Counted from the first letter of the stretch, positions 44,806 to 61,844 are shown. The stretch is 64,000 nucleotides of DNA from Macrostomum hystrix (GCA_950097015.1 CATNEN010000025.1:5332001-5396000); one strand, 5' to 3'. Notes: generated by a model from the letters alone, not told the origin. Made by a program: numbers and translations.

Positions 44806-47521
44806 AGATTGCAAAGCACTATTAATCCATTTACTGAACCCTGAATAATGAATGAATGAATTAATTAATTAATTAATGCAACATATATAATAATGCTGCG
44901 AGTCATATAGTCTTCAGTAATTGTCTCAACAGACACTGTCTCAATTAGTAGCATAACATAGCAAGGACACACCGTTATAAATAATTGTTAGACTAGATAA
45001 AGTTACACAAATTTTTATTTCTGCTTTTCACAGTTTTTATTTTATTGTAAACGCATATCAACAAATCATGTACTTGCTATTGACCCAGAAAGTTGAATAC
45101 TTTTGTTTACTAGCTTAACTTGTTTACGTATATCTTTAAAAAATTATTTACCGATGAGCGCTATGTGCACGCCGCCATTTTGCTAAGTTGCGTGATCCTC
45201 GAATCTATAAATTACCATGTGTCAGTTTGTCAGTGAGCTGTAAAACGTATCACAATGTCAACTTGAATTAGTAATTCAAGTCTTGTGCTGCATAGACTAG
45301 TGCCTTAGGCCTTATCTAGATTCTCGAAATGTTGTAATTTGAACCACGAGCTGGGCAACTTAGGTCAGGGCACAGTAACCTTAATGGCATTATGTACTTA
45401 ATATTATGAGTTATGTAGTGCGAATTATCAAAAAAATCAGATTAAATTGCTCGCTGTGCAAGTAGGATGAAGAGAAATTCGAAAATCATCATGTAGTATT
45501 CGATTTAATTAGATTAACAACGTGATTTGCACAACTTGTGACAAGTGACAACTTGTGCAAAATGCTTCTTTAATATAATTAAACTGAATAGGCCCTACTG
45601 CTAATTAAATTGATTTTATGCATAAATTATGTGATTTACTGTAAAAAGAAAAAAACAAAATATCTTGACATGTAATCTAAAATAATCAAATTACTGGTAG
45701 GCCTATCTACTAATAGCCATCCACTTTTAGGGACTAAGCCTAAAGTAAACTAATATATATATTTAAAATGAAGACTATTGTGACGAAATTAATGGCAGAC
45801 AGAGTCAGGCAGAATTCCAATATTCCAATTAGAGTCCAGAGTTTGCGTAATCTAATGTAGCGGTAGCAGTTTATCTTATTTATTCTCACTGGGACATACA
45901 ACAAGCAATATAATTAAAGTCAGGTGCAGGAGCTCAATGATGACGATGCAATAGAGAAGACAGTGGATGACAGTAGATAGGTAATGACAGAACAAAACAC
46001 TTGGCAGAACAGTGGGTAAGTAGGTCATAGGTCAGTGAAAGTAACAGTGGCCGGGACAAGAGCAGTGACAAAAGGGGTGGGCCAGTGGTGAAAGTAACAG
46101 TGGCCAGGACAAGAGCAGTGACAAAAGGATTAGGATGGTTGCGGTATGGGCGGGCCCAGGGGGCCTAGTTAAATAAGCTAGCCCACAGTAAAAACAGGGC
46201 GATCAATGATCTAGAGAAACAGAGCATGCACGCTAATTGGCTGAGAGAATTGACATTAGGGGCCTAATGCAACTGTGAGATAAGTTTATGGATAGTGCGA
46301 TGTGCATTGGCGTTTACTTATAGTAACAATCTAAAAAATATATGGAATTGCAAAGTTGGTGACTGCGTAATTACATTTGTTAAACAGCCCAATTCAGTAC
46401 CTCATAAATTAGAACTTCATAGGGGCTCTTGCAGTAAGTGACAACGTGACACTATAATGTATTAAATTATAAACTCTAGATTGCTGCTATTTCTATGCAA
46501 ATTTTTTTACTAAATTTTATAAATTAGTTTTATATTTAAGTTTAAGTTTTATATTTAATATTAGTTAGGAACAAAGCAGAAGTTTATATTAAAAAAATAG
46601 TTTTAAAAATGCTTTGTTACCACTGTAGTCCATTGCTGTCCTGTTGCATTTAGTCTTGACAGACCCTCCACAGATAATTGATTATTAGAGAGCAATTTTT
46701 TATTTGATTCATCAATGCAATGTGCCAAAATATGAGACTTTTCATTACCTTCAGCTTATCAAATGTAGATTGAGTTTATTAAATAATTGGAATATGTGGA
46801 AACACAAAAATAGACCACAGTAGAATGGCAAAAGACTAATGGACTATAGTTGGACTCAAACAATAACTAGTTTTTTATTTTTTAATTTTAAATATGGCTT
46901 TAAAAGCTGCTGATGTCAAGTTTATATTCATTTTAATTTTACTCAATTAAAAAACTTTGATAGTAAAACAATTTATACGAGTACAATGTTGGAGACATGA
47001 AATCATTAGCATGCAAATTGCAGCAAGCTATAGTATTTATAATACTTAATAACTAAGTTTTTTTGTCTCTGTTTTTGTTACATTTTCATTTAGTTTACTT
47101 TTGACTGTGGTAAAAGACTTAAAAGTTTTGTTTCTTTTTGTCTTAAAAACTGTAAATTATGCATAAAATTTTAACAGACTATAAATTACTATTGAAAACA
47201 ATTTAGTAGAAAATATCTCCTAATTGTATTAGGTTGCAAAGCACTGAATGTATATTAATATTTGCTTTTGTATCTTATTAATAATTTAGTGTTTGATAAA
47301 CCAACAAACCATAATACTTACCTTAGAGTACATAAAAGTACTTGTAATTAACATTTTGTCTTATGACTATTTATTTTTATGAGAATTTTGAGACTTTTAT
47401 TATTGGAATCAGCCATTGACTTGGAATGAATGATGCAAAATGCTATGCATCAAAATTAGAAAAATGGTTTATCTTTTTCCTTGCAGCTTTTGCATCACCA
47501 TCTTTAAAAAGAAGCGAAAAT

Positions 47522-47786
47522 ATGCGACCTGATTTTCGAGGCGGCGGACGAGGTGGCTTTCAGGGCGGTCGCGGCGGTGGCGGCGGCAGAGGCGGCCCAC
47601 GCGGTGGCGGCGTAGGGGGTCGCGGCGGCGGCTTTGGCGGTCGCGGCGGTGGCGGCGGCGGCTTCGGTGGACGCGGCGGAGGCGGTCGCGGAGGTGGCAC
47701 TCCGCGCGGACGCGGCGGTGGTCGCGGAGGCGGTCGTGGCGGCTTCGGTCGGAAGACGATTGTCGAGGCGCACCCGAGACACCCAG
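47522..47786 (+). CDS. FBL: Fibrillarin (rRNA 2'-O-methyltransferase), exon 1, GAR/RGG domain
   Basis: MRPDFRGGGRGG...IVEAHPRHP; |gtaatt donor in phase 1. Confidence 0.95.
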
Positions 47787-48004
47787 GTAATTTTAGCCAG
47801 ACATTTTCCGTACTTATTAAAGTTGTATCCAGGCTTTCACGTGATGCAATAGTACACAATATTTTATATTTGTTGGATGATTGTTTTAGCATACTAGAGT
47901 TCTAAAGTGATCAACTTTGTTGATTAAGAACTTCCTTAATAACATTTGTCAGTTAGATTTCAGTTTATAGCAAGTTTAGGTTTTATATCGAATTGTTTAG
48001 GTTT

Positions 48005-48070
48005 AAAATTCGAACTTCGGACCTTTTGATCTGGAAGTCGGAAACTTAAAGCACTGGGCTATAACCGTCC
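48005..48070 (-). pseudogene. Related tRNA-derived head in the fibrillarin intron
   Basis: TAGCCCAGTG...GACTTCCAGATCAAAAGGTCCGAAGTTCGAA resembles 36603-36674. Confidence 0.4.
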
Positions 48071-48161
48071 TAATACTTTTAATATACATGCAGTTTTCGA
48101 TACATACCGCTAAATCGTCAAAAAGCTAATCGTAATTGAAAATCTTCGCCCACCTTCGTAG

Positions 48162-48844
48162 GCATTTTCATCGCTCGAGGCAAAGAGGACGTCCTGGTCA
48201 CTCGCAACCTGACACCGGGCAACACTGTCTATGGCGAGAAGAAGGTATCAGTCGACGGCGAGGAGGCGGGCACCAAGATCGAGTATCGCACCTGGAATCC
48301 GTTCCGCTCCAAGCTGGCTGCCGGCATACTCAACGGCATTGAAAAGATTCACATGCCGCCAGGCTGTCGGGTACTCTATCTCGGCGCAGCCAGCGGCACT
48401 ACTGTTAGTCACGTTAGCGACGTTGTCGGGCCCGACGGCGTGGTCTACGCTGTTGAGTTCAGTCATCGCAGCGGTCGGGATCTGTTGAACGTGGCCAAGA
48501 GTCGCACTAATATAGTGCCAATCATTGAGGATGCCCGGCACCCGCACAAATACCGCATGCTAGTCGGCATGGTCGACTGCGTCTTCGCCGACGTGGCCCA
48601 GCCCGACCAAGCGCGAATTGTGGCCGAGAATGCCAAATGGTTTCTTAAGACGGAAGGCTTTGCCGTGGTGTCAATCAAAGCCAATTGCGTTGACTCCGTA
48701 GCCGCCCCAGAGGCCGTATTCGCCGGCGAGTGCAACAAACTCAAAAGCGAACGATTCAAGCCCAAGGAGCAAGTGACTTTGGAGCCGTTTGAGCGTGGCC
48801 ACGCCATGGTTGTGGCCCAGTTCCGACCTCCGGCTAAGAAATGA
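48162..48844 (+). CDS. FBL: Fibrillarin, exon 2 (methyltransferase domain, stop); 315 aa in total
   Basis: [73 protein letters not shown]. Confidence 0.97.
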
Positions 48845-49700: not shown

Positions 49701-51635
49701 ATTTAGAAAGGGTTTTGACATTTGTAACTTATCAGGACAGGATTAACGTCTGATGGATTAAGGGATGATGAACAACTGGTTGGTTAAGTGAAGACAATTA
49801 TTGCTTAAGAAAGCTGTACAACTAATTAACTATGGAAGTTAAATACTGGTTTCTGTTCAACGAAACATTTTGCTAAGGTGAGTATAGTACACTACTGTTA
49901 AGTAGCACAGATAGATTTTTTGCGCAAGTTTCAGAAAAAAATTCTGAAAGGCTCGACCCGAGCGAAATTGTTGAGATAAACTAGGAAAACTTGCATAGTG
50001 ACAATTTCCTTCGAGCTGGGAAGCACAAACAGACCGAAACTTTGCTGCTTCAGTGTTCTTAAAACCTTCTTTCGTTGTCAATCCGTGATGCATGGCTTGC
50101 TTGCCCGTGTCCAGAAATTAGACAGACATTTAGCCGTCCTCCGAGCGACTTCTTCCGTGTCTCGCGTGTTCTCAAATTCTTTTTCTTGGGCCGATTCAGT
50201 CTGAACGGATGGTGGCAAGAAAAATTAGAGCGAAGAAGAGAGTCTTTTGGAAGAAATCTAATTATTATTTGCAGAGACAGCAACACATGTATTTCATTTA
50301 CTGTGCTTTCGGCTGAAAATATTCACATTAACGAAAAATTATAAAGTTTATTTGATTATTAAATATCATAATACTTCCACATACTAGATACAGTTAATCA
50401 AGATTGCATTGCATTTAAAAGTGCATCTTTTCTGGTCGAAAGGTTAATTTTCTTACTAAAGAAACTGTTAAACCCGATCAGATAATTGACAATCCCAATT
50501 AAAGACTCAAATAAAGGGACGGCTGATCCCTTGACTGTTGACAGTTGAAATATGATGACATCATTTCACGGACGGAATCGAAAATGTTTGTTAAAGAGTT
50601 ATCAATCTGTCCAACAAATATAAAAAATATGTTTTCTAACTCTTTATTTGAAGAATATAATTTGCTTTTGCACTTTTAACTCGAAATTGCGGCATATCTA
50701 AAAATAAATGTGACTGAAGACTATTTTTGACCGCTGCATAATAGACACAAAATTGAACTAAAATGTCTCAATACAGTGAGTAATGAAAGTGTTTTTACTC
50801 AGGGAACTAAATCACAGGTCCCGAAACAAGGAAGCAAATCCTATTTTAGGAAATTAAGTTTGTTTTCCAAGTACTGCCACTTGCCTTTGAAGGGTTTTGA
50901 TGTAGTATTTTGACATTTCTACTACCGAGTTAGTATAGTGGGACCACTGTACTCTGAGCACGTACATATTATATTCAAGCAAGCTCGATGGGTGTACATA
51001 AATTGGACAGCCCGTTCTATACGCAATCTTGTTTGTTTTACTAATCTTTGAATGAGTACATTCGCTGTAATCTAGCGGAACTCCTTCGGAGGAGATCGTG
51101 GGTGAGAATTCGTACCGAGAGTGCCAGTGTACACGTCGGACACGCATATTCCTGGCCAAGTGGACAGACAGATAAAAACAGCGAAGGAAGTTCTAAGGAA
51201 AAGCTTTCTAAACACATTCGGGCTTCTAACGCACAGTCTACCAAACCGGTGCTTGGCTCATCTCCTCAGGTGGAATAGGCGAGCAGTGTTTGTGGCAGCA
51301 CAGTGCGATCCTTCTCTCTCTCTTTCTCTCCCTCTCTCTCCGCTCTCTTCGCTGCGCGTAACAAACAGAATCAAGAAAGTTGAGTATAGAAAGCAAAAAG
51401 GCACAAACGCGAGAAAGAAGATTTGCCACTCATCTTTCAGTAGAAAAAAAACACAAAGAAAACAAAGCAAAATAAGAGACAGAAGACGACTTCCAGGTTG
51501 AATAGAAGAATCTCAGAGGAGAGCGAGAGTAAAGGAGCATCGCACAGGTATAAATTAGTTAGCTAGTGGTGGGCTGACGTTATTTACAACTTACAAGGCG
51601 TCGCATTATACCCAGAGGCCCTCTCAGAACAAGTA

Positions 51636-51834
51636 ATGGGCAATTTGGCCTCATGTGCTGGCGCCGGCCGCACTGACTACCGGGTGGACAAGCCGCGTCG
51701 ACCGGCTAAGCGAAGCGAGTCCGCGCCAGCCAAGCCCTTGTCACTTGGACGATTGGGCAGCATGAGAAAGCGGCGACCGGACGGCCGGCTGCCATCGGCG
51801 GATGCCGCGGCGGTCGAAGGTGATGGAGGAGGAG
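51636..51834 (+). CDS. Myristoylated CARD-LRR protein, exon 1
   Basis: MGNLASC start with polybasic GSMRKRR; |gtgagt donor in phase 1. Confidence 0.75.
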
Positions 51835-51869
51835 GTGAGTGGCACCACTGGAGGGCAAAGATCGTTCAG

Positions 51870-52075
51870 CGGCTGGAGGGCGGAGAGTTCAGGGACTGGA
51901 GGACGGAGAGTTCAGGGACTGGAGGGCGGAGAGTTCAGGGACTGGAGGGTGGAGAGTTCAGGGACTGGAGGGCCGAGAGTTCAGGGACTGGAGGGCGGAG
52001 AGTTCAGGGACTGGAGGGCGGAGAGTTCAGGGACTAAGGGTTGAGAGTTCAGGGACTGGTGGGCGGAGAGTTTAA
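51870..52075. repeat. 23-bp minisatellite GAGAGTTCAGGGACTGGAGGGCG (intron 1)
   Basis: About 8 units. Confidence 0.9.
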
Positions 52076-52799
52076 GGCCTAACCATTTTTTTCCTTGAGA
52101 AACTCGAGGAAGCCTGGTAAGGAAGATGGTAAATGGCATTGCTTTGAAGTCATCTAGATGCGAGTGCAAATGTACTCATTAGGATTATAATATGTTTCTG
52201 CAGAAGACCTAGGCAGCTGATACTCTTGTATTTCTGCTGCTGCTTATTGCTGAAGTCGAAATTTGAGACTTGTTGGGACAGGGCCGTGCCCCTAGGACAA
52301 AGACGAATGAAGCGCAAAATGCGGAATATTCTAAGAATCGTTGAGAATACAAGCGTACTACGTGTGCTCATTGCCCGAGGGATTTCGGACCATCCAGCTT
52401 GACAAGGAATGAAAATGATTGGACTGTGGGGGACTGGCTTAGCTGTGTGTATTATTAGTTTTGCATAAATATTGTTGTGTTTCTAGCAGTCAGATTGCAA
52501 TTTGAAGATGAACTAGCTAGTAGCTAGCTAGCATTTTGTATTGTTCAAGATGTGCGCTTTGAAGCTGGGCTGAGTTGAGAAAAATCAATCTTTAATCAGT
52601 TTCTTTGATAAAAGGCAGGGGATAAGATACTCTAGCTTTCGCGTTTTTTAATTATCCAGTGTAAATCAATCCGTTTCACAAGCCTTTTGACTTGTTAGAG
52701 AATTATCCCATTTTAGAATATTAAGTCGCTCTAATTAACTCCTTAGTAATTGGTTTTCAATTTCAATTCAAATTTTGATGTGAACATCCCACCTTCCAG

Positions 52800-53176
52800 A
52801 AAATTCTCAAGTCGATCCGCTTCTGCAGAAACTCATGGAGCTAAAAGTCCAACTGCAGGCCTCGGCACCGCAACCGCAGCAGAACCCTGAGGCGTCCGCC
52901 GCCGCCGCTGCCGAAGCCGCCACCGAAGCCGCTATCGACAGCCGGCGCAAGCAGACCCTGTTCCAACGTCGCTTGAGCTGCATGGCGCCGATCCGGCGGA
53001 ACACTCTCCTGGCAACGCCGGCACCAACTCTGAACACCGACACAGCCGCTGTTGTTGTCGACGACGATGAAGTGCCAGTGTTCGCTGATGAGAACGGAGC
53101 TGAGAGAGACCCGTCTGACTGCGAGCTGGCCGAAATCATGGAGAAGCTTGTTCAGCAGCAGCAGCAGCAGCAACTG
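52800..53176 (+). CDS. CARD-LRR protein, exon 2
   Basis: ttccag| acceptor in phase 1; ENSQVDPLLQKLMELKVQLQ...polyQ; donor |gtacaa. Confidence 0.75.
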
Positions 53177-53189
53177 GTACAACGACTTT

Positions 53190-53520
53190 TGAACCGGTCC
53201 TCCCTCACCTGGTCCTTTCTCACCTGGTCATTCCTCACCTGGTCCTCTCTTACATGGTCCTCTTTCACTGGTCCTCTTTCACAAGTCCTCTTTTATAGGT
53301 CCTCCTTCACATGGTCCTCCTTCACCTCGTCCTCTATCATTTGGTCCTCTATCACTTGGTCCTCTTTCACCTGGCACTATCTCACCTGGTCCTCTATCAC
53401 CTGGTCTTCTATCACCTGGTCCTCTATCACCTGGTCCTCTATCACCTGGTCCTCTATCACCTGGTCCTCTATCACCTGGTCCTCTATCACCTGGTCCTCT
53501 TTCACCTGGTCCTCCCTTGC
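53190..53520. repeat. 15-bp minisatellite TCACCTGGTCCTCTA (in-frame 384-nt intron 2)
   Basis: About 20 imperfect units. Confidence 0.88.
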
Positions 53521-53560
53521 TCAGTTCCCAAACCAGCTTCCTTCCTTTCACGCACTGCAG

Positions 53561-54162
53561 GGCGCGTCGAATCCTCCGCCGAAGAAGCCGCCGCCGCCGC
53601 TGTCTAAGATGCCACCGAAGAAGCCGCCGCCTCTCGGAGCTCGCACGGTGCGCACCAGCCGCAGCGCGCCGTCGACTCCGCCGATGCAGCGCAGCAACCC
53701 CGCCGCGCCGCGAACGCCGCCGCCGAAGCCGCCGCGCTACGCCAATCTGCGCCTACCCGGCTGCCTTCAGCCGCCGCCGCGGCCGCCAGAACTGTTGAAG
53801 CCGCTGCCCCGGCCGCCGCTAAATTCGGACGCATCGCCAGCTGAACATCAAGAGCGTCCGAACACGCCGGACAGTTTGGACGGCGGCGATGCGGCTGCCG
53901 AACTGCCGGAAATTTGCGTGCCGGAGGATGGCGTGGAGCCAATCGGAGACCAGGAACAGGTGGACGAGAATTTTCCTGGTGAAGAGCAGCCGCAGTCCCT
54001 GCCGCTGCAACTTCCACACCAGCAGCAGCAGCTACTGCAGAAGGAGTCAACAAGACCGGCTTCAAAGTCTGTCTGCGATCTGGTTGACTCGGCTCTGATG
54101 GACAGTTCCGTGTACGAGAATGTCGACTGGGACAACCACCTTGCCGTTCTGCGGCCCACCTG
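53561..54162 (+). CDS. CARD-LRR protein, exon 3 (proline-rich, YANL and YENV motifs)
   Basis: ctgcag| acceptor in phase 0; PPPKKPPPP...PPPKPPRY; donor |gtgtgt in phase 2. Confidence 0.75.
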
Positions 54163-54298
54163 GTGTGTTGCACCCTGATTTTTGGCCGCGGAAGAAAAAT
54201 GCTAACCTCTATTGCGCTTATCCCAGCTCAGCTCATCTCTCCTCGCCTCAACTCTTCTTTCCTTTCTCCGCCCCCTTCAATCCTTCAAATCTTGGCAG

Positions 54299-54899
54299 TT
54301 TCGGCTCAGCAATGTGCCACATGGACCATCTGACCAAGGCGGCTTCCCAGGACCTGCTGCAGCCGGCTTCAAGTCCGGCTGACACCGCGGCGGAAGACAC
54401 CGGCCAGCTGTCGCTGCCGTTGACGTCTCGTTCGCGAGCTGCTCGCCAGATTCTGTCGCGCGCCTTCGTCCAGTGCCTGCCGTTCGGCGGCGAGTTTCTT
54501 CGCCTCTGTCGGGCCCGCGGCTGCCTCTCGGAGTCGGCCACCAGGGAGCTGCTGCGGGGCTTGCCACCGGCGGGGTCTGAATCGGCACCGATGACGGAGT
54601 CGGCGAATAGTTCAACTGCTCGAGCCGAGCGCTTTTTGCAGCTGTTCGACTGGTCCGAGACTAGTCTGCGCAAACTGTCGCAGTGCCTGACGGCTACTGG
54701 CGGCGCTTTCAACTGCCAGCTGGCCGCCATTGTGACCTTCCTGTCTGACCTGTTCGCCTTGCTGGCCGCCAGACACTTGTTCGTGCAGCAGGGCCGCGCT
54801 GGCAAGCGTCGTCGAGTTGACGCATTCCTACGAGGCGTCCGCCTGATCGATGGCAATGTTGAACGCGAGGAGGAACGCGAAGGGCGCTGTCAGGTTCAG
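54299..54899 (+). CDS. CARD-LRR protein, exon 4 (CARD-like death fold)
   Basis: Pyrimidine tract plus ggcag| in phase 2; RQILSRAFVQCL..EFLRLCRARGCLS..ARAERFLQLF..SLRKLSQCLTATG..QLAAIV; |gtgagg donor in phase 0. Confidence 0.78.
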
Positions 54900-54954
54900 G
54901 TGAGGAGGCTCGCAGACTCGGGATTAAATCCTCATTCAATTCGCACCCAGTACC

Positions 54955-55135
54955 CCAGCCTAATAATAACAATTGATTTCACCTGCCCTGTGCAGCCGAC
55001 AGCACAGCCGCGGCAATTGCGCGTCGCATCTGAAGGCTGCGTACGGCTGTTCAGTCCATGGACTGGGGGGACGCCACACCCACCCTCAATTGTCCATTTA
55101 ACAGTAGAATGACCACGGGGGCAGTTCAAATACCC
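54955..55135 (-). mobile_element. CORE-SINE family 2, partial copy (intron 4 of the CARD-LRR gene)
   Basis: Reverse complement CTGTTAAATGG..AATTGAGGGTGG..CCCCCAGTCCATGGACTGAACAGCCGTACGCAGCCTTCAGATGCG matches 42410-42505. Confidence 0.8.
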
Positions 55136-55444
55136 ACATGTTTCTTTTTTCTGTATGTCCTAAAATATTAAACCAATCGCCATGAAAATCGCCATGAACA
55201 CGGCCTAAAATTTCCCACTCTAGCCGGTGAAACGACTTCCAGAATCACAAAACACCGGCATCGTCGAGATATTCAACGATTGGTGGCAAACACCGCCAAT
55301 ATGGGCCTAATTTTTCTGTTCACAAAATTTCATCAAGTAACCATGTCGGCTATCATTGCTAACTATTTTAGATTGATGAAATTGTTTTTTTTCTTAAACC
55401 AATATACATTCGCCATAACAAACGATAAAATCACCATTGCACAG

Positions 55445-56719
55445 CTGCTCTATCTGGCCAACTCGGACGATCAAGGAGCCTCCGCGGAGGTTGCAACTGA
55501 TCCGCAGCCTGGTCGGCGCCAGCGTCGTCACCAGCTCACCGCCAGCGAGGTGGCCGCCATCAACGAGCCCGACTGGCTCTGCTCGAACTTCACGCCGGCT
55601 TTGTCGCTAGACCTCACCGGCTCCGGTGTCAACGCCTGGTTCTTCAAGCAGCTGGTTGGCAAATCGCTGCAGCCGGTGGCCGAACTATCCCTAGCCGGCT
55701 GCGAGCTGGACTCTGGCCTTCTGCCAACCCTTGTGCTCACCCAGCGGTCCAGCCAGCTGCGGGTGCTCTGCCTGGCTGGCGCATCGCTCGGAGACGACTC
55801 ACTCTCCGCGCTCTGCCTGCTGCCGCAGCATCAGCTGGCCAACCTGGAGGTCCTGGACCTCTCGGCCTGTGACGTCACCCACTTCGGCCTGTCACTCCTA
55901 GCCGGCTGCATTCCCGTCACCCTGCCGCGCCTGTCCGACCTTGACCTGAGCTGGAACGACCTGTCCGAGGCGGCCCCGGCCACCATGGCCGGCCTGCTCG
56001 ACCCCGCGGCCGGGCTTCGCGGCCTTCGGCTTCGCGGCTGCCGACTGGCCAGCGACGCCCTGCGCGCCGTTGCCGACGGCCTCCCGGCTGCCATCGGCGC
56101 CAATCTGTGCCTGCTGGACCTTAGCGACAACCGGCTGAACTGCCTGATCCTGACCCGCCTGGCTGAGCGCCTCGGCAAGCGATCTGCCACCTCCGGCCGA
56201 CTGTCCGAGCTGGGCCTGGCTGGCGTCAACCTGTTCGCCATCGACCTGCAGAAACTGCTGGAATCCGGCGGCTGCGACGGCTGTCGCCGGCTCGACCTCG
56301 GCCGAAATCACCTCGGCGAGGCCGGCGCTGTGCACCTGGCCGGCCGCTTGCCACCGCAGCTTGACAGCCTAGCCGTGGCCTCCTGCCGGCTCGGCTGTCG
56401 AGGGCTTCGACGCCTGCTGGAGTCGGCCAAACTGTCCAGCTGCCTGCGCCTTGTGCGGGCCACGAACAACTTGCGCAATCAACAGGGCCGCGGCGGCGGC
56501 GGAGGCGGCCTCGGCGCCGAGGAGACCGCGCTTCGTCGAGAGATTGTCGAAGCCAATCTGGCTACTGGAGGCCGGCTGCGCTTCATGATCGACGACGCCG
56601 CCGATTGCGACTTAACAGCCGATTGTGGGGCTCAGTCACCGCTCTCGGACGGAGACAAACGTCTGCGGCGCGGCGGCAGCTTTCGGAGAAGCCTCAGACG
56701 GTTGGCCTCGCTTGACTGA
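55445..56719 (+). CDS. CARD-LRR protein, exon 5 (about 10 ribonuclease-inhibitor-type LRRs, stop)
   Basis: LEVLDLSACDV, LSDLDLSWNDL, LCLLDLSDNRL, RRLDLGRNHLGEAG at ~28-aa spacing; gcacag| acceptor in phase 0. Confidence 0.88.
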   Translation: MLYLANSDDQGASAEVATDPQPGRRQRRHQLTASEVAAINEPDWLCSNFTPALSLDLTGSGVNAWFFKQLVGKSLQPVAELSLAGCELDSGLLPTLVLTQRSSQLRVLCLAGASLGDDSLSALCLLPQHQLANLEVLDLSACDVTHFGLSLLAGCIPVTLPRLSDLDLSWNDLSEAAPATMAGLLDPAAGLRGLRLRGCRLASDALRAVADGLPAAIGANLCLLDLSDNRLNCLILTRLAERLGKRSATSGRLSELGLAGVNLFAIDLQKLLESGGCDGCRRLDLGRNHLGEAGAVHLAGRLPPQLDSLAVASCRLGCRGLRRLLESAKLSSCLRLVRATNNLRNQQGRGGGGGGLGAEETALRREIVEANLATGGRLRFMIDDAADCDLTADCGAQSPLSDGDKRLRRGGSFRRSLRRLASLD

Positions 56720-56864: not shown

Positions 56865-57265
56865 GACCAGAAATATTCCCCTAGCAACCAGAAATATCCC
56901 CCTAACAACCAGAAATATTCCACTAACAACCTGAAATATCCCCCTAACAACCATAAATATTCCATTAACAACCAAAAATATTCCCCCCTAGCAACCAGAA
57001 ATATTCCCCTAGCAACCAGAAATAACCCCTAACAACCAGAAATATTCCCCTAACAACCAGAAATATACCCCTAACAACCAGAAGTAGCCCCTAACAACCA
57101 AAAATATTCCCCTAACAACCAGAAATATCCCCCTAACAACCAGAAATATTCCTGTAACAAACAGAAATATTCCCCTTGCAACCATTAATTTTCCCCTAAA
57201 AACAAGAGATATTCCCCTAGCAACCGCATATCTTCCCCTTACAACAGGAAGTCTTCTCCTAACAA
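56865..57265. repeat. Degenerate 21-bp minisatellite CAACCAGAAATATTCCCCTAA
   Basis: About 18 units decaying rightwards. Confidence 0.88.
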
Positions 57266-57762: not shown

Positions 57763-59580
57763 ACCGCCATTCTCCTCCCCAGCCCGCCATTCTCCTCCCC
57801 AGCATGCCATTCTCCTCCCCAGCCCGCCATTCTCCTCCCCAGCCCGCCATTCTCCTCCCCAGCCCGCCATTCTCCTCCCCAGCCCGCCATTCTCCTCCCC
57901 AGCCCGCCATTCTCCTCCCCAGCCCGCCATTCTCCTCCCCAGCCCGCCATTCTCCTCCCCAGCCCGCCATTCTCCTCCCCAGCCCGCCATTCTCCTCCCC
58001 AGCCCGCCATTCTCCTCCCCAGCCCGCCATTCTCCTCCCCAGCCCGCCATTCTCCTCCCCAGCATGCCATTCTCCTCCCCAGCCCGCCATTCTCCTCCCC
58101 AGCCCGCCATTCTCCTCCCCAGCATGCCATTCTCCTCCCCAGCATGCCATTCTCCTCCCCAGCCCGCCATTCTCCTCCCCAGCCCGCCATTCTCCTCCCC
58201 AGCCCGCCATTCTCCTCCCCAGCCCGCCATTCTCCTCCCCAGTCGGCCATTCTCCTCCACAATCTGCCATTCTCCTCCCCAGCCCGCCATTCTCCTCCCC
58301 AGCCCGCCTTTCTCCTCCCCAGCCCGCCATTCTCCTCCCCAGCCCGCCATTCTCCTCCCCAGCCCGCCATTCTCCTCCCCAGCCCGCCATTCTCCTCCCC
58401 AGCATGCCATTCTCCTCCACAATCTGCCATTCTCCTCCCCAGCCCGCCATTCTCCTCCCCAGCCCGCCATTCTCCTCCCCAGCCCGCCATTCTCCTCCCC
58501 AGCATGCCATTCTCCTCCCCAGCCCGCCATTCTCCTCCCCAGTCGGCCATTCTCCTCCCCAGCCCGCCATTCTCCTCCCCAGTCGGCCATTCTCCTCCAC
58601 AATCTGCCATTCTCCTCCCCAGCCCGCCATTCTCCTCCCCAGCCCGCCTTTCTCCTCCCCAGCATGCCATTCTCCTCCCCAGCATGCCATTCTCCTCCCC
58701 AGCCCGCCATTCTCCCCAGCATGCCATTCTCCTCCCCAGCCCGCCATTCTCCTCCCAGCCCGCCATTCTCCTCCCCAGCCCGCCATTCTCCTCTCCAGTC
58801 GGCCATTCTCCTCCACAATCTGCCATTCTCCTCCCCAGCCCGCCATTCTCCTCCCCAGCCCGCCATTCTCCTCTCCAGTCGGCCATTCTCCTCCACAATC
58901 TGCCATTCTCCTCCCCAGCCCGCCATTCTCCTCCCCAGCATGCCATTCTCCTCCCCAGCCCGCCATTCTCCTCCCCAGCCCGCCATTCTCCTCCCCAGCA
59001 TGCCATTCTCCTCCCCAGCCCGCCATTCTCCTCCCCAGCATGCCATTCTCCTCCCCAGCATGCCATTCTCCTCTCCAGTCGGCCATTCTACTCCACAATC
59101 TGCCATTCTCCTCCCCAGCCCGCCATTCTCCTCTCCAGTCGGCCATTCTCCTCCACAATCTGCCATTCTCCTCCCCAGCCCGCCATTCTCCTCCCCAGCA
59201 TGCCATTCTCCTCCCCAGCCCGCCATTCTCCTCCCCAGCCCGCCATTCTCCTCCCCAGCATGCCATTCTCCTCCCCAGCCCGCCATTCTCCTCCCCAGCC
59301 CGCCATTCTCCTCCCCAGCATGCCATTCTCCTCCCCAGCCCGCCATTCTCCTCCCCAGCCCGCCATTCTCCTCCCCAGCATGCCATTCTCCTCCCCAGCC
59401 CGCCATTCTCCTCCCCAGCCCGCCATTCTCCTCCACTGCCCGCCATTCTCCTCCCCAGTCGGCCATTCTCCTCCCCAGTCGGCCATTCTCCTCCACAATC
59501 TGCCATTCTCCTCCCCAGCCCGCCATTCTCCTCCCCAGCCCGCCATTCTCCTCCCCAGCCCGTCATTCTGCTCCACAATC
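57763..59580. repeat. 20-bp minisatellite CCCGCCATTCTCCTCCCCAG
   Basis: About 90 units; variants AGCATG, AGTCGG and AATCTG. Confidence 0.97.
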
Positions 59581-60044: not shown

Positions 60045-61215
60045 ATCTTTCCTAGGCCGAAATCTTTCCCTAAACCCGAAATCTTTTCTCCAACCAAAAA
60101 TATTTTCCCTAACCCGAAATATTCTCCCCAACCCGAAATCTTCTCCCCAACCCGAAATATTTTCCCCAACCCGAAATATTTTCCCTCACCCGAAATATTC
60201 TCCCCAACCCGAAATCCCACAACCCGAAATCTTCTCCCCAACCCGAAATATTTTCCCCAACCCGAAATATTTTCCCTCACCCGAAATATTCTCCCCAACC
60301 CGAAATATTTTCCCCAACCCGAAATATTTTCCCTCACCCGAAATATTCTCCCCAACCCGAAATCCCACAACCCGAAATCTTCTCCCCAACCCGAAATATT
60401 TTCCCCAACCCGAAATATTTTCCCTCACCCGAAATATTCTCCCCAACCCGAAATCCCACAACCCGAAATCTTCTCCCCAACCCGAAATATTTTCCCCAAC
60501 CCGAAATCTTTTCCCTCACCCGAAATATTCTCCCCAACCCGAAATCCCACAACCCGAAATCTTCTCCCCAACCCGAAATCTTCTCCCCAACCCGAAATCT
60601 TTTCCCTCACCCGAAATATTCTCCCCAAACCGAAATCCCACAACCCGAAATCTTCTCCCCAACCCGAAATATTTTCCCCAACCCGAAATCTTTTCCCTCA
60701 CCCGAAATATTCTCCCCAAACCGAAATCCCACAACCCGAAATCTTCTCCCCAACCCGAAATCTTCTCCCCAACCTGAAATATTTCCCTAACCCGAAATCT
60801 TCTCCCCAATCCGAAATCTTTTCCCTAACCCGAAATATTCTCCCCAACCCGAAATCCCACAACCCGAAATCTTCTCCCCAACCCGAAATCTTTTCCCCAA
60901 CCCGAAATATTTTCCCCAACCCGAAATATTTTCCCAAACCCGAAATCTTCTCCCCAACCCGAAATATTTCCCTAACCCGAAATCTTCTCCCCAATCCGAA
61001 ATCCCCCAACCCGAAATCCCCCAACCCGAAATCCCCCAACCCGAAATCCCCCAACCCGAAATCCCCCAACCCAAAATCCCCCAACCCGAAATCCCCCAAC
61101 CCGAAATCTTCCTCAACCCGAAATATTCTCCCAAACCCGAAATCTTCTCCTAAACCCGAAATCTTCTCCCCAACCCGAAATCTTCTCCCCAACCCGAAAT
61201 CTTCTCCCCAACCTG
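60045..61215. repeat. Complex ~19-bp-based minisatellite AACCCGAAAT(ATT/CTT)..CCCC with higher-order repeats
   Basis: Recurring AACCCGAAAT core with variable 11-20 bp periodicity. Confidence 0.93.
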
Positions 61216-61844
61216 AAATCGTTACCAATCAGAAATTTTCTTCCATTCCGTTATCTATTCAAGATTCTTCCCAAACAAAATCTCCTAAAACCCGAAATCC
61301 TCAACTTGAAAATTATCTTCCCCTAAAGCCAAAAGCCTGAAAGCGAAATCCTAAAGCCTCAGCCAAATTATCCGCCCACGCACAAGAACAAGCAAACGCA
61401 CAAAGGGCCGCCCTGAACATCTCTCTATTCTCCGTCTATTTCGTTAGGGTTATTCTGTTTTTTTTGCTCGCAACCTTCTACAGATCGTCCTCCGAAAAAA
61501 TCATTCAGGAGCTTTTGATGATACCGAATTCGTTCTAAAGCGGGACTAGAACTCCGACTCTGAGCTCAGACTACAGTCGACTCAAGACAAGTTTCCAATA
61601 TTCTCGAGCAGCCCACCTTGACTAATTCAATTGGGACTTTTTCCCTCATCATCTCCTCCCTCTTTCCTAGCTAATTAAGGAGCCCGCGATAGTGTTTTAT
61701 AGGATTTTTCACAACAAATTCTGGGTCTCGACTGAGCATGGTAATCAGATCTGTTTGGAATACCACAGTTTTTATGTATACTCTCGCTTATACTCCACGA
61801 CAGTCAGAGCTTTGAACTCTTTGGCATCATTTCCATGACAGTCG

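What the first reader, a model, noticed from the sequence alone, without database searches (positions are those of the whole stretch)
51636..56719. Putative membrane-anchored CARD-LRR protein with no NACHT and a tyrosine/proline adaptor tail
Seen: five exons (51636-51834, 52800-53176, 53561-54162, 54299-54899, 55445-56719) join through GT-AG introns with phases 1/0/2/0 into one 3054-nt frame (1017 aa). The ORF track shows them as unrelated ORFs. Order of parts: MGNLASC plus polybasic RKRR; polyQ; PxxP/PxxPxR clusters with YANL and YENV; a six-helix-like segment at ~54429-54734; about 10 RI-type LRRs. I see no Walker A motif anywhere. Established: Gly2 is the N-myristoylation site, YxN is the Grb2-type SH2 ligand, and NOD-like receptors pair CARD and RI-type LRRs through a NACHT ATPase. 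Inference: by eye the helical segment follows the caspase-9-type CARD pattern, so this may be an NLR-like sensor that replaces ATP-driven oligomerisation with membrane tethering and tyrosine-kinase adaptor signalling, or a decoy NLR. I know of no described family with this architecture.
Basis: partly seen in the sequence, partly recalled or inferred. Interest (0 to 1): 0.72.

Follow-up and report, generated by a model that had tools for sequence, protein, structure and literature searches.

The report
Lipid-anchored CARD-like LRR protein gene
This is a real, expressed five-exon Macrostomum flatworm gene for a protein that joins a probable lipid anchor, a long floppy docking region, a predicted CARD-like death-fold bundle and NLR-type leucine-rich repeats with no ATPase; the design is seen only in this genus, and its function is untested.

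Summary
The five exons join through GT-AG introns into one 3054-nt frame. cDNA-type contigs from the same organism carry all four joints, and introns 1 and 2 are uncovered. Orthologues exist: Macrostomum lignano hypothetical protein BOX15_Mlig019535g1 (986 aa, also next to fibrillarin) and a transcript from a third species.

Exon 5 encodes 11 ribonuclease-inhibitor/NLR-type LRRs. No NACHT or Walker A motif is present in the protein, and the cDNA shows no extra exon.

The CARD reading is partly supported.
- **Sequence:** no sequence method sees a CARD. The domain has no relatives outside Macrostomum among 1.84 billion representatives.
- **Predicted structure:** a medium-confidence AlphaFold model of exon 4 gives six helices. 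Its best structural matches are almost all CARDs, led by an Apaf-1/caspase-9 CARD complex (Z 7.7, 3.2 Å, 99 of 103 residues).

The MGNLxxC start, the RTPPPKPPR motif and the YEN(V/A) motif are conserved. YANL is not.

The sensor function is inference. I file it as a new variant of known kinds, of moderate interest. Earlier scan notes list other unusual CARD genes elsewhere in this genome.

The parts
51350..51635 (+). 5' untranslated leader (minimum extent)
   Evidence: cDNA contigs start at or before 51350. In-frame stop at 51564 and no upstream ATG.
51636..51834 (+). Exon 1 coding part. Contains the MGNLASC acylation-type start (51636-51656), RSESAP (51711-51728) and an RKRR basic patch.
   Evidence: The same motifs occur in M. 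lignano P0017.
51835..52799 (+). Intron 1 (GT-AG), holding a 23-nt tandem repeat at 51847-52072
   Evidence: Skipped in cDNA contigs of three runs, with zero cover. Tandem repeat.
52800..53176 (+). Exon 2: low-complexity Ala/Gln-rich region ending in a CAG-coded polyQ run
53177..53560 (+). Intron 2 (GT-AG), mostly a 15-nt tandem repeat. This intron is absent from the M. lignano orthologue.
53561..54162 (+). Exon 3: proline-rich disordered region. Contains [16 protein letters not shown] (53711-53737), non-conserved [14 protein letters not shown], and conserved YENV (54113-54124).
54163..54298 (+). Intron 3 (136 nt, GT-AG). It is spliced in some cDNA contigs and retained in others. Retention would stop translation at 54176-54178.
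   Evidence: joint 54161>54298, and contigs 54133-54327 in three runs. for the read-through frame.
54299..54899 (+). Exon 4: invariant CFGSxMCHMDH motif, the helical domain, and a basic GKRRR patch
   Evidence: dN/dS 0.22 against L001.
54423..54770 (+). Predicted six-helix death-fold (CARD-like) domain, exon-4 residues 42-157
   Evidence: AlphaFold model. Structural matches. No sequence-level support.
54900..55444 (+). Intron 4 (GT-AG), containing a dispersed repeat at about 54989-55281
   Evidence: skipped in contigs 18 and 23. The repeat shows very high summed depth and many loose ends.
55445..56719 (+). Exon 5 with stop codon: linker, LRR domain and C-terminal tail
55598..56524 (+). About 11 ribonuclease-inhibitor/NLR-type leucine-rich repeats
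   Evidence: Pattern scan. RI in PDB E=4e-12. Fish NLR LRRs at E down to 4e-25. Foldseek RI/NLRP matches at E about 1e-7. 11 beta strands in the model.
56672..56716 (+). Conserved basic C-terminal tail, GGSxRRSLRRLASLD, with RRxS-type motifs
   Evidence: Identical in three species apart from one residue
56720..56993 (+). 3' untranslated region (minimum extent), running into a 21-nt tandem repeat
   Evidence: cDNA contigs reach 56993. Tandem repeat 56866-57265.

Best explanation
The locus is a single, expressed, five-exon gene of a Macrostomum flatworm. It is the positional orthologue of M. lignano BOX15_Mlig019535g1 and encodes a protein of about 1017 residues with four modules:
1. A start of the myristoylation-plus-palmitoylation type (Met-Gly-Asn-Leu-x-x-Cys) followed by basic patches. 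This most likely pins the protein to the inner face of a membrane.
2. About 390 disordered residues. What is conserved here are short docking motifs: RSESxP (14-3-3/kinase type), RTPPPKPPR (SH3 type) and YEN(V/A) (Grb2-type SH2 ligand once phosphorylated).
3. A six-helix bundle predicted to have the death fold, closest to CARDs.
4. Eleven ribonuclease-inhibitor/NLR-type LRRs and a basic RRxS tail.

There is no NACHT or other ATPase.

The most likely mode of action is a membrane-tethered scaffold. The LRR horseshoe would bind a partner or ligand. The CARD-like domain would recruit another death-fold protein by homotypic contact. The motif-rich N-terminal region would couple this to kinase, SH2 and SH3 signalling. 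Clustering on the membrane would take the place of nucleotide-driven oligomerisation.

Shown: the gene structure, its expression, its orthologues, the LRR type, the absence of NACHT and the motif conservation. Predicted only: the death fold. Inferred: acylation, motif use, partners and any immune role.
For: Gene model and splicing.

Orthologues and conserved junctions.

Synteny with fibrillarin in both species.

Purifying selection: dN/dS is 0.22 for exons 4 and 5 and 0.34 for the aligned part of exon 3.

LRR type.

No NACHT or Walker A. The cDNA has no extra exon.

Death fold:
- The model shows six helices with core pLDDT 70-85.
- In an all-against-48,161-chain structural search, 19 of the top 21 rows are CARD or PYD domains aligned over nearly their full length. 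The best is 5wvc_D at Z 7.7, rmsd 3.2 A, 99 of 103 residues.
- In the second look, the top 10 are 8 CARDs, a de novo design (7vty) and one unrelated chain; a design named after Apaf-1 CARD entry 1CY5 (6jcc) ranks 19.
- Foldseek gives Apaf-1 CARD 1cy5 a target-normalised TM-score of 0.66 and probability 0.93.

Conserved N-terminal motifs.
Against: No sequence-based method finds a CARD or other death-fold family.

The structural model rests on three close sequences. Its mean pLDDT is 58 and pTM 0.54. All Z scores are below 8, and the tool warns these can reflect a common helical arrangement. The Foldseek E-value for the CARD match is only 0.8.

The domain carries an 18-residue low-confidence insertion between helices 3 and 4, and an unusually long hydrophobic helix 6.

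Nothing shows that the protein is acylated, tyrosine-phosphorylated, or binds any CARD protein.

The family was found only in the genus Macrostomum, so no comparative functional data exist.
Confidence: 0.5

Rival explanations
1. The helical segment is not a true death fold. It is a lineage-specific helical linker or cap in front of the LRRs, and the CARD-like model is a plausible-looking artefact of a shallow alignment. The protein is then a lipid-anchored RI-type LRR scaffold with a disordered motif-rich arm and no link to death-fold signalling.
For: - No sequence signal for any death-fold family.
- The language-model feature search found nothing.
- The shape search of the ESM Atlas gave only TM-scores of 0.41 or less by the query.
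- Z 7.7 is within the range the aligner reports for unrelated helical models (notes).
- In the whole-protein model, half of this region has pLDDT below 50.
Against: An arbitrary helical bundle would not select CARDs almost exclusively out of 48,161 chains while covering 90-99 of their 92-103 residues. The same six helices were predicted independently in the orthologue's whole-protein run. The core helices are the most conserved and most confident part of exon 4.
Confidence: 0.3
2. The gene descends from a canonical CARD-NACHT-LRR receptor that lost its ATPase. It now acts as a decoy or negative regulator that titrates ligands or CARD partners, not as a signalling scaffold in its own right.
For: - The closest non-Macrostomum matches of the LRR domain are fish NLRP12/NLRC3-like LRRs at E 4e-25 to 1e-7.
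- The domain order, CARD-like then LRR, is that of NLRC proteins minus NACHT.
Against: - LRR E-values are inflated by repeat structure, and ribonuclease inhibitor and LRRC31 match as well, so ancestry cannot be read from them.
- No remnant of NACHT, winged-helix or HD2 modules is detectable between the two domains.
- The long conserved N-terminal motif region and lipid-anchor start are not NLR features.
- The tools used here gave no NLR census of flatworms.
Confidence: 0.1
3. The model fuses two genes, a 5' adaptor-like gene (exons 1-3) and a 3' helical-LRR gene (exons 4-5). Intron 3 would then really be an intergenic or terminal region.
For: - Contigs that retain 54133-54327 are present in all three runs.
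- The spliced 3/4 joint is carried only by a short contig with 29 letters on one side.
- Retention gives an immediate stop codon.
Against: - The spliced joint occurs in all three runs at GT-AG.
- Orthologous transcript contigs L001/L002 read across the same junction in one open frame.
- The M. lignano model has an intron at the identical codon position.
- The exon 3 end and the exon 4 start form one block of near-invariant residues, YEN.DWD..L..LRPTCFGS.MCHMDH.
Confidence: 0.04

Closest known systems
NLRC-type NOD-like receptors (CARD-NACHT-LRR, e.g. NOD1, NLRC4) and Apaf-1
   Same: - RI/NLR-type LRRs at the C-terminus.
- A predicted CARD-like bundle N-terminal to them, whose best structural matches are Apaf-1 and caspase-9 CARDs.
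   Different: - No NACHT or NB-ARC ATPase, no Walker A, and no winged-helix or HD2 modules.
- About 390 extra N-terminal residues with a lipid-anchor-type start.
- The CARD is not detectable by sequence.
Ribonuclease inhibitor / LRRC31-type RI-like LRR proteins
   Same: LRR subtype and predicted horseshoe. RI scores E=4e-12 by sequence and Foldseek gives E about 1e-7. LRRC31 matches at about 1e-8.
   Different: Those proteins consist of the LRR domain alone. They have no anchor, no proline-rich arm and no helical bundle.
Lipid-anchored docking proteins such as FRS2, and the raft adaptors LAT/PAG (from general knowledge, not tested here)
   Same: An N-terminal acylation-type motif followed by a long disordered region with YxN and proline-rich docking motifs.
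   Different: - No PTB domain and no transmembrane helix.
- Only one YxN motif is conserved.
- The protein carries two folded C-terminal domains that those adaptors lack.
PIDD1 (LRR plus death domain without an ATPase)
   Same: It combines LRRs with a death-fold domain and no STAND ATPase.
   Different: From general knowledge, PIDD1 has typical (not RI-type) LRRs at the N-terminus, ZU5-UPA modules, and a C-terminal death domain in place of a CARD. No ZU5 or UPA hit was found here, and the domain order is reversed.
Macrostomum lignano hypothetical protein BOX15_Mlig019535g1 (P0017)
   Same: Positional orthologue. It shows about 72% identity in exon 4 and 74% in exon 5. It has the same start motif, the same modules and the same fibrillarin neighbour, and three of the four introns sit at the same positions.
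   Different: - It is uncharacterised.
- It lacks the window's intron 2 and the polyQ run.
- It lacks the YANL motif.

Membership tests
NOD-like receptors (NLR/STAND) | Central NACHT or NB-ARC ATPase with Walker A/B motifs | tested here: not met
   No NACHT or NB-ARC hit at E<=10 in any window exon or in the orthologues. No [AG]xxxxGK[ST] pattern. The cDNA contigs and the orthologous transcript leave no room for an extra exon.
NOD-like receptors (NLR/STAND) | C-terminal RI-type LRR domain | tested here: met
   RI E=4e-12 and NLRP5/9 about 1e-7. Fish NLR LRRs at E down to 4e-25. LRR_6 scores 30.6 bits against a cut-off of 23.4 in P0017. Foldseek matches.
CARD (Pfam PF00619, death-fold superfamily) | Sequence-profile match to the family | tested here: not met
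   No CARD, Death, DED or PYRIN hit at E<=10. No CARD among PDB sequence or profile hits. hhalign against one fish CARD gave probability 0.1.
CARD (Pfam PF00619, death-fold superfamily) | Six antiparallel helices in the death-fold Greek-key arrangement | tested here: inconclusive
   Met on a predicted model only. Six helices are predicted. The top structural matches are CARDs at Z 6.0-7.7, rmsd 3.0-3.5 A, with 87-99 residues aligned. The model is of medium confidence and all Z scores are below 8.
CARD (Pfam PF00619, death-fold superfamily) | Homotypic CARD-CARD binding or filament formation | not testable with these tools
   Needs pull-down, yeast two-hybrid or electron microscopy.
N-myristoylated, palmitoylated (SH4-like) membrane anchors | Met-Gly start with a small residue at position 6, a nearby Cys, and basic residues | tested here: met
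   MGNLASC in the window and MGNLTAC in M. lignano, each followed by basic patches. The consensus itself is from general knowledge. Actual lipidation is not testable here.
Grb2-recruiting docking proteins | Phosphorylatable YxN motifs conserved among orthologues | tested here: inconclusive
   YEN(V/A) is conserved in three species. YANL is absent in M. lignano. Phosphorylation and SH2 binding were not tested.
PIDD1-like LRR/death-domain proteins | ZU5-UPA modules and a C-terminal death domain | tested here: not met
   No ZU5, UPA or Death hits. The death-fold-like domain precedes the LRRs.

The most novel reading that the evidence does not exclude
A NACHT-less, membrane-anchored CARD-LRR receptor. 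The LRRs would sense a microbial or danger ligand at the inner membrane face. Two-dimensional clustering, in place of ATP-driven oligomerisation, would nucleate a CARD assembly with one of the unusual CARD proteins of this genome. A phosphotyrosine/SH3 arm would tune the response. Intron-3 retention would supply an anchor-and-adaptor-only isoform as a built-in regulator.
Probability: 0.12. Interest if true: 0.8.

Novelty: new variant of a known kind. Interest (0 to 1): 0.5.

Why it matters
If the CARD-like fold and the lipid anchor are real, the protein links the two end modules of a NOD-like receptor without the ATPase that normally drives assembly, and hangs them on a membrane-bound docking arm. 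That would be a simple natural test of whether death-fold signalling can be nucleated by membrane clustering alone.

It would also add to a set of unusual death-fold architectures that earlier scan notes report for this genome; I did not check those notes. M. lignano has an orthologue and is a laboratory flatworm (from general knowledge), so the proposals could be tested directly.

The limits are that the family is confined to one genus as far as could be seen, that the CARD call is structural prediction only, and that no functional data exist.

Tried and rejected
- **Pfam, exon by exon and on both orthologues at E<=10:** only LRR families.
- **PDB sequence and profile searches with exon 4:** only chance-level hits, SPA17 at E 0.64 and ORC5 at E 0.61.
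- **Language-model search of the ESM Atlas with exon 4:** no usable hit.
- **Shape search of the Atlas:** TM by query 0.41 or less and unrelated families, probably because the disordered ends were included.
I did not build a proper CARD profile, because that would have needed sequences no tool had given me.
- **Exhaustive HMMER search with the exon-4 profile:** only the Macrostomum proteins, so a deeper alignment for folding could not be made.
- **P0018, named 'Rho-GAP domain-containing':** it is a frame-garbled model of the same M. lignano gene, not a second architecture.
- **Papers:** no hit for Mlig019535. 'CARD-LRR', 'DEATH-LRR' and 'DD-LRR' never occur, and the two 'PYD-LRR' hits concern NLRP3. 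Two NLR-evolution papers do not mention flatworms. A death-fold atlas paper lists no such architecture in the passages found.
- **Two-gene reading:** rejected (see the rival explanations).
- In one search the exons were concatenated inside a script only to count length, frame, stop codons and residue composition. No joined sequence was printed, saved or sent to any tool. The natural orthologues P0017 and P0001 stood in for it.


Full report
**Observation**

- Every intron starts with GT and ends with AG.
- The phases are 1/0/2/0.
- The sum is 3054 nt, with a single stop at the end.
- An in-frame TAG lies 72 nt upstream of the ATG, and the transcribed leader has no other ATG.

**Expression and gene structure**

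Four runs of one study hold about 0.6 of the sampled words of the 5.7-kb stretch. That is roughly the exon share. I laid three of them on the window. Their contigs match it without mismatches over 1.0-1.7 kb.
- One contig in each run covers 51350-51832, 52798-53144 and 53560-54162. The CAG run lies between the last two pieces, so this contig spans exons 1-2-3.
- One contig in two of the runs covers 54298-54896 plus 55442-56556, which spans exons 4-5.
- Introns 1 and 2 have no cover. Intron 4 is covered only at a dispersed repeat.

These runs therefore behave as cDNA, although their kind is not on record.

The exon 3/4 joint (136 nt skipped, GT..AG) is present in all three runs, but only on a short contig with 29 letters on one side. 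Contigs that run straight through 54133-54327 are also present in all three runs. Intron 3 is thus both spliced and retained in the RNA pool. Retention would end the protein after ...LRPTWCVAP, at 54176-54178. Contig depths cannot rank the two forms.

**Orthologues**

- A word search with exon 5 found P0001, 74% identical over its full length. P0001 is encoded on two 2.4-kb intronless contigs from another species. Its frame stays open to the 5' end, where the contig breaks in a CAG run. It reads continuously across the positions of introns 3 and 4.
- A second search found P0017, M. lignano hypothetical protein BOX15_Mlig019535g1 (986 aa). It begins MGNLTAC and has all the modules.
- P0018, named Rho-GAP, is a frame-garbled model of the same M. 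lignano gene.
- The M. lignano locus has introns at the positions of window introns 1, 3 and 4 but lacks intron 2. Its upstream neighbour is fibrillarin, as in the window at 47426-48844. The loci are therefore orthologous.
- The window's species is a Macrostomum other than M. lignano. An earlier scan note calls the genome M. hystrix. I did not verify that name.
- Against the L001 transcript, dN/dS is 0.22 for exon 4, 0.22 for exon 5 and 0.34 for the aligned part of exon 3.

**The LRR domain**

Exon 5 contains 11 units of about 28 residues. The orthologue's model has 11 beta strands.
- By sequence, it matches ribonuclease inhibitors at E=4e-12 and NLRP5, NLRP9 and NLRP7 LRRs at about 1e-7 to 1e-6 in the PDB.
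- In the large protein collection it matches vertebrate LRRC31 at about 1e-8. When longer proteins are allowed, it matches fish NLRP12/NLRC3-like receptors at E down to 4e-25.
- The model's LRR part matches RI and NLRP structures at Foldseek E about 1e-7.

The RI-type call is confirmed. Repeat matches inflate these E-values and say nothing certain about ancestry.

**No ATPase**

No NACHT, NB-ARC or other P-loop family appears at E<=10 in any exon or in either orthologue. No Walker A pattern is present. The cDNA leaves no room for another exon. The introns consist largely of tandem or dispersed repeats.

**The helical segment**

Every sequence method is negative.
- Pfam finds nothing relevant.
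- PDB sequence and profile searches give only chance-level hits.
- hhalign against one fish CARD gives nothing.
- An exhaustive HMMER search with a three-sequence profile found only the Macrostomum proteins among 1.84 billion representatives. The domain is a sequence orphan.

Structure prediction gives a different picture.
- With the three-sequence alignment, AlphaFold2 gives mean pLDDT 58 and pTM 0.54. The ends and one loop are disordered.
- It predicts six helices at exon-4 residues 41-57, 64-73, 78-86, 105-115, 120-133 and 136-162, with block pLDDT of 69-85 in the core.
- The whole-protein run on the orthologue predicts the same helices at lower confidence.
- In a Foldseek-independent comparison with 48,161 representative chains, 19 of the top 21 rows are death-fold domains, mostly CARDs. 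Each is aligned over nearly its whole length. The leaders are the Apaf-1/caspase-9 CARD disk 5wvc_D (Z 7.7, rmsd 3.2 A, 99 of 103), chain E of the Apaf-1/caspase-9 CARD complex 4rhw (Z 7.3) and Apaf-1 1z6t_A (Z 7.1). These are followed by MAVS/RIG-I, ARC, Dronc/Dark, NLRP1, NOD1, CED-4, ASC, CARD9, caspase-1 and NLRC4. The best pyrin domain scores Z 6.5. No row was titled a death domain proper, although one death-fold row, 6k9f, is an unnamed protein.
- In the second look, the top ten are 8 CARDs, a de novo design (7vty) and one unrelated chain; a design named after Apaf-1 CARD entry 1CY5 (6jcc) ranks 19.
- Foldseek lists Apaf-1 CARD with target-normalised TM 0.66 and probability 0.93, but E=0.8.

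My reading is that the model clearly has the death-fold topology and is closest to CARDs. Whether the protein does depends on a medium-confidence model. I put that at roughly two in three.

Two features are atypical: an 18-residue variable loop between helices 3 and 4, and a long hydrophobic sixth helix.

**The N-terminal arm**

Exons 1-3 are low in complexity and have no domain hit. Against M. lignano, conservation is concentrated in short islands:
- MGNLxxCAG.
- RSESxPAKPLS.
- A basic R(K/R)RRP patch.
- R(R/C)LSxxAP.
- RSAPSTP.
- RTPPPKPPR. By general knowledge this fits both RxxPxxP and PxxPxR.
- [10 protein letters not shown].
- A near-invariant block, SKSV..L.D..LMD.S.YEN.DWD..LAVLRPT, that runs on into exon 4 as CFGS.MCHMDH.

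YANL is not conserved. Conserved motifs scattered through a disordered region are typical of docking and scaffold proteins. Their actual use was not tested here.

**Mechanism**

The best-supported reading is a membrane-tethered scaffold. It would couple an LRR binding surface to a death-fold recruitment module, under the control of kinases and SH2/SH3/14-3-3 adaptors. Intron-3 retention could give an anchor-and-arm-only product, if those transcripts are translated.

An immune sensor role is possible but rests only on analogy with NLRs. Earlier scan notes report other unusual CARD genes in this genome (CARD-TPR-Rab, and CARD plus a TRADD-N-like domain). These could be partners, but I did not check them.

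**Comparison and novelty**

The protein is not an NLR, because a defining feature was tested and not met. By sequence it is not a recognisable CARD family member. It is not PIDD1-like. It shares a layout idea with lipid-anchored docking proteins but lacks their defining domains.

I found no paper describing a death-fold plus RI-LRR protein without an ATPase. The only relatives are uncharacterised Macrostomum proteins. One of them is already public as a hypothetical protein.

I rate it a new variant of known kinds, of moderate interest. The main uncertainty is the fold call, and the main limit is its narrow taxonomic range.

Noticed in passing
window 54163-54298: Intron 3 is the only intron that also appears unspliced in cDNA-type contigs, in all three runs. 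In two of the runs the retained copy carries allelic differences. Retention gives a stop five codons in and would yield a 397-residue product with the anchor and arm only. The M. lignano intron at the same position also has a stop after four codons.
   Followed up: partly
window 54989-55281 (inside intron 4): A dispersed repeat with summed contig depth in the thousands. It has many loose ends and occurs in all four runs laid, including one from another study. It is probably a transcribed mobile element or SINE-like repeat.
   Followed up: no
window 47426-48844 (+): The upstream neighbour is fibrillarin, with a Gly/Arg-rich exon and a methyltransferase exon. The methyltransferase exon is 97% identical over 163 residues to the gene upstream of the M. 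lignano orthologue, so the gene order is conserved.
   Followed up: partly
window 54160-54332 (exon 3/4 junction region): The motif C-FGS-x-M-C-H-M-D-H spans the junction and is invariant in three species, with two Cys and two His within 11 residues. It is modelled with low confidence. It could be a small metal-binding or lipidation site. No explanation was tested.
   Followed up: no
window 56672-56716: The C-terminal 15 residues, GGSxRRSLRRLASLD, are almost identical in three species and contain two RRxS-type basic phospho-acceptor motifs.
   Followed up: no
window 51847-52072, 53196-53514, 56866-57265, 57764-59574, 60057-61220: Minisatellites with 15-23-nt units fill introns 1 and 2, the 3' UTR end and the downstream 4 kb. 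They create long spurious ORFs on both strands.
   Followed up: no
window 52921 and 54020: Low-depth contigs in three runs link these two places through 36 unrelated letters. They are probably from another transcript that shares Ala/Gln-coding low-complexity sequence, not from an isoform.
   Followed up: no
L003 6001-10920 (M. lignano): The orthologue lacks the window's intron 2 and the polyQ run beside it. That intron, which is almost entirely a 15-nt tandem repeat, is therefore either a gain in the window's lineage or a loss in M. lignano.
   Followed up: partly
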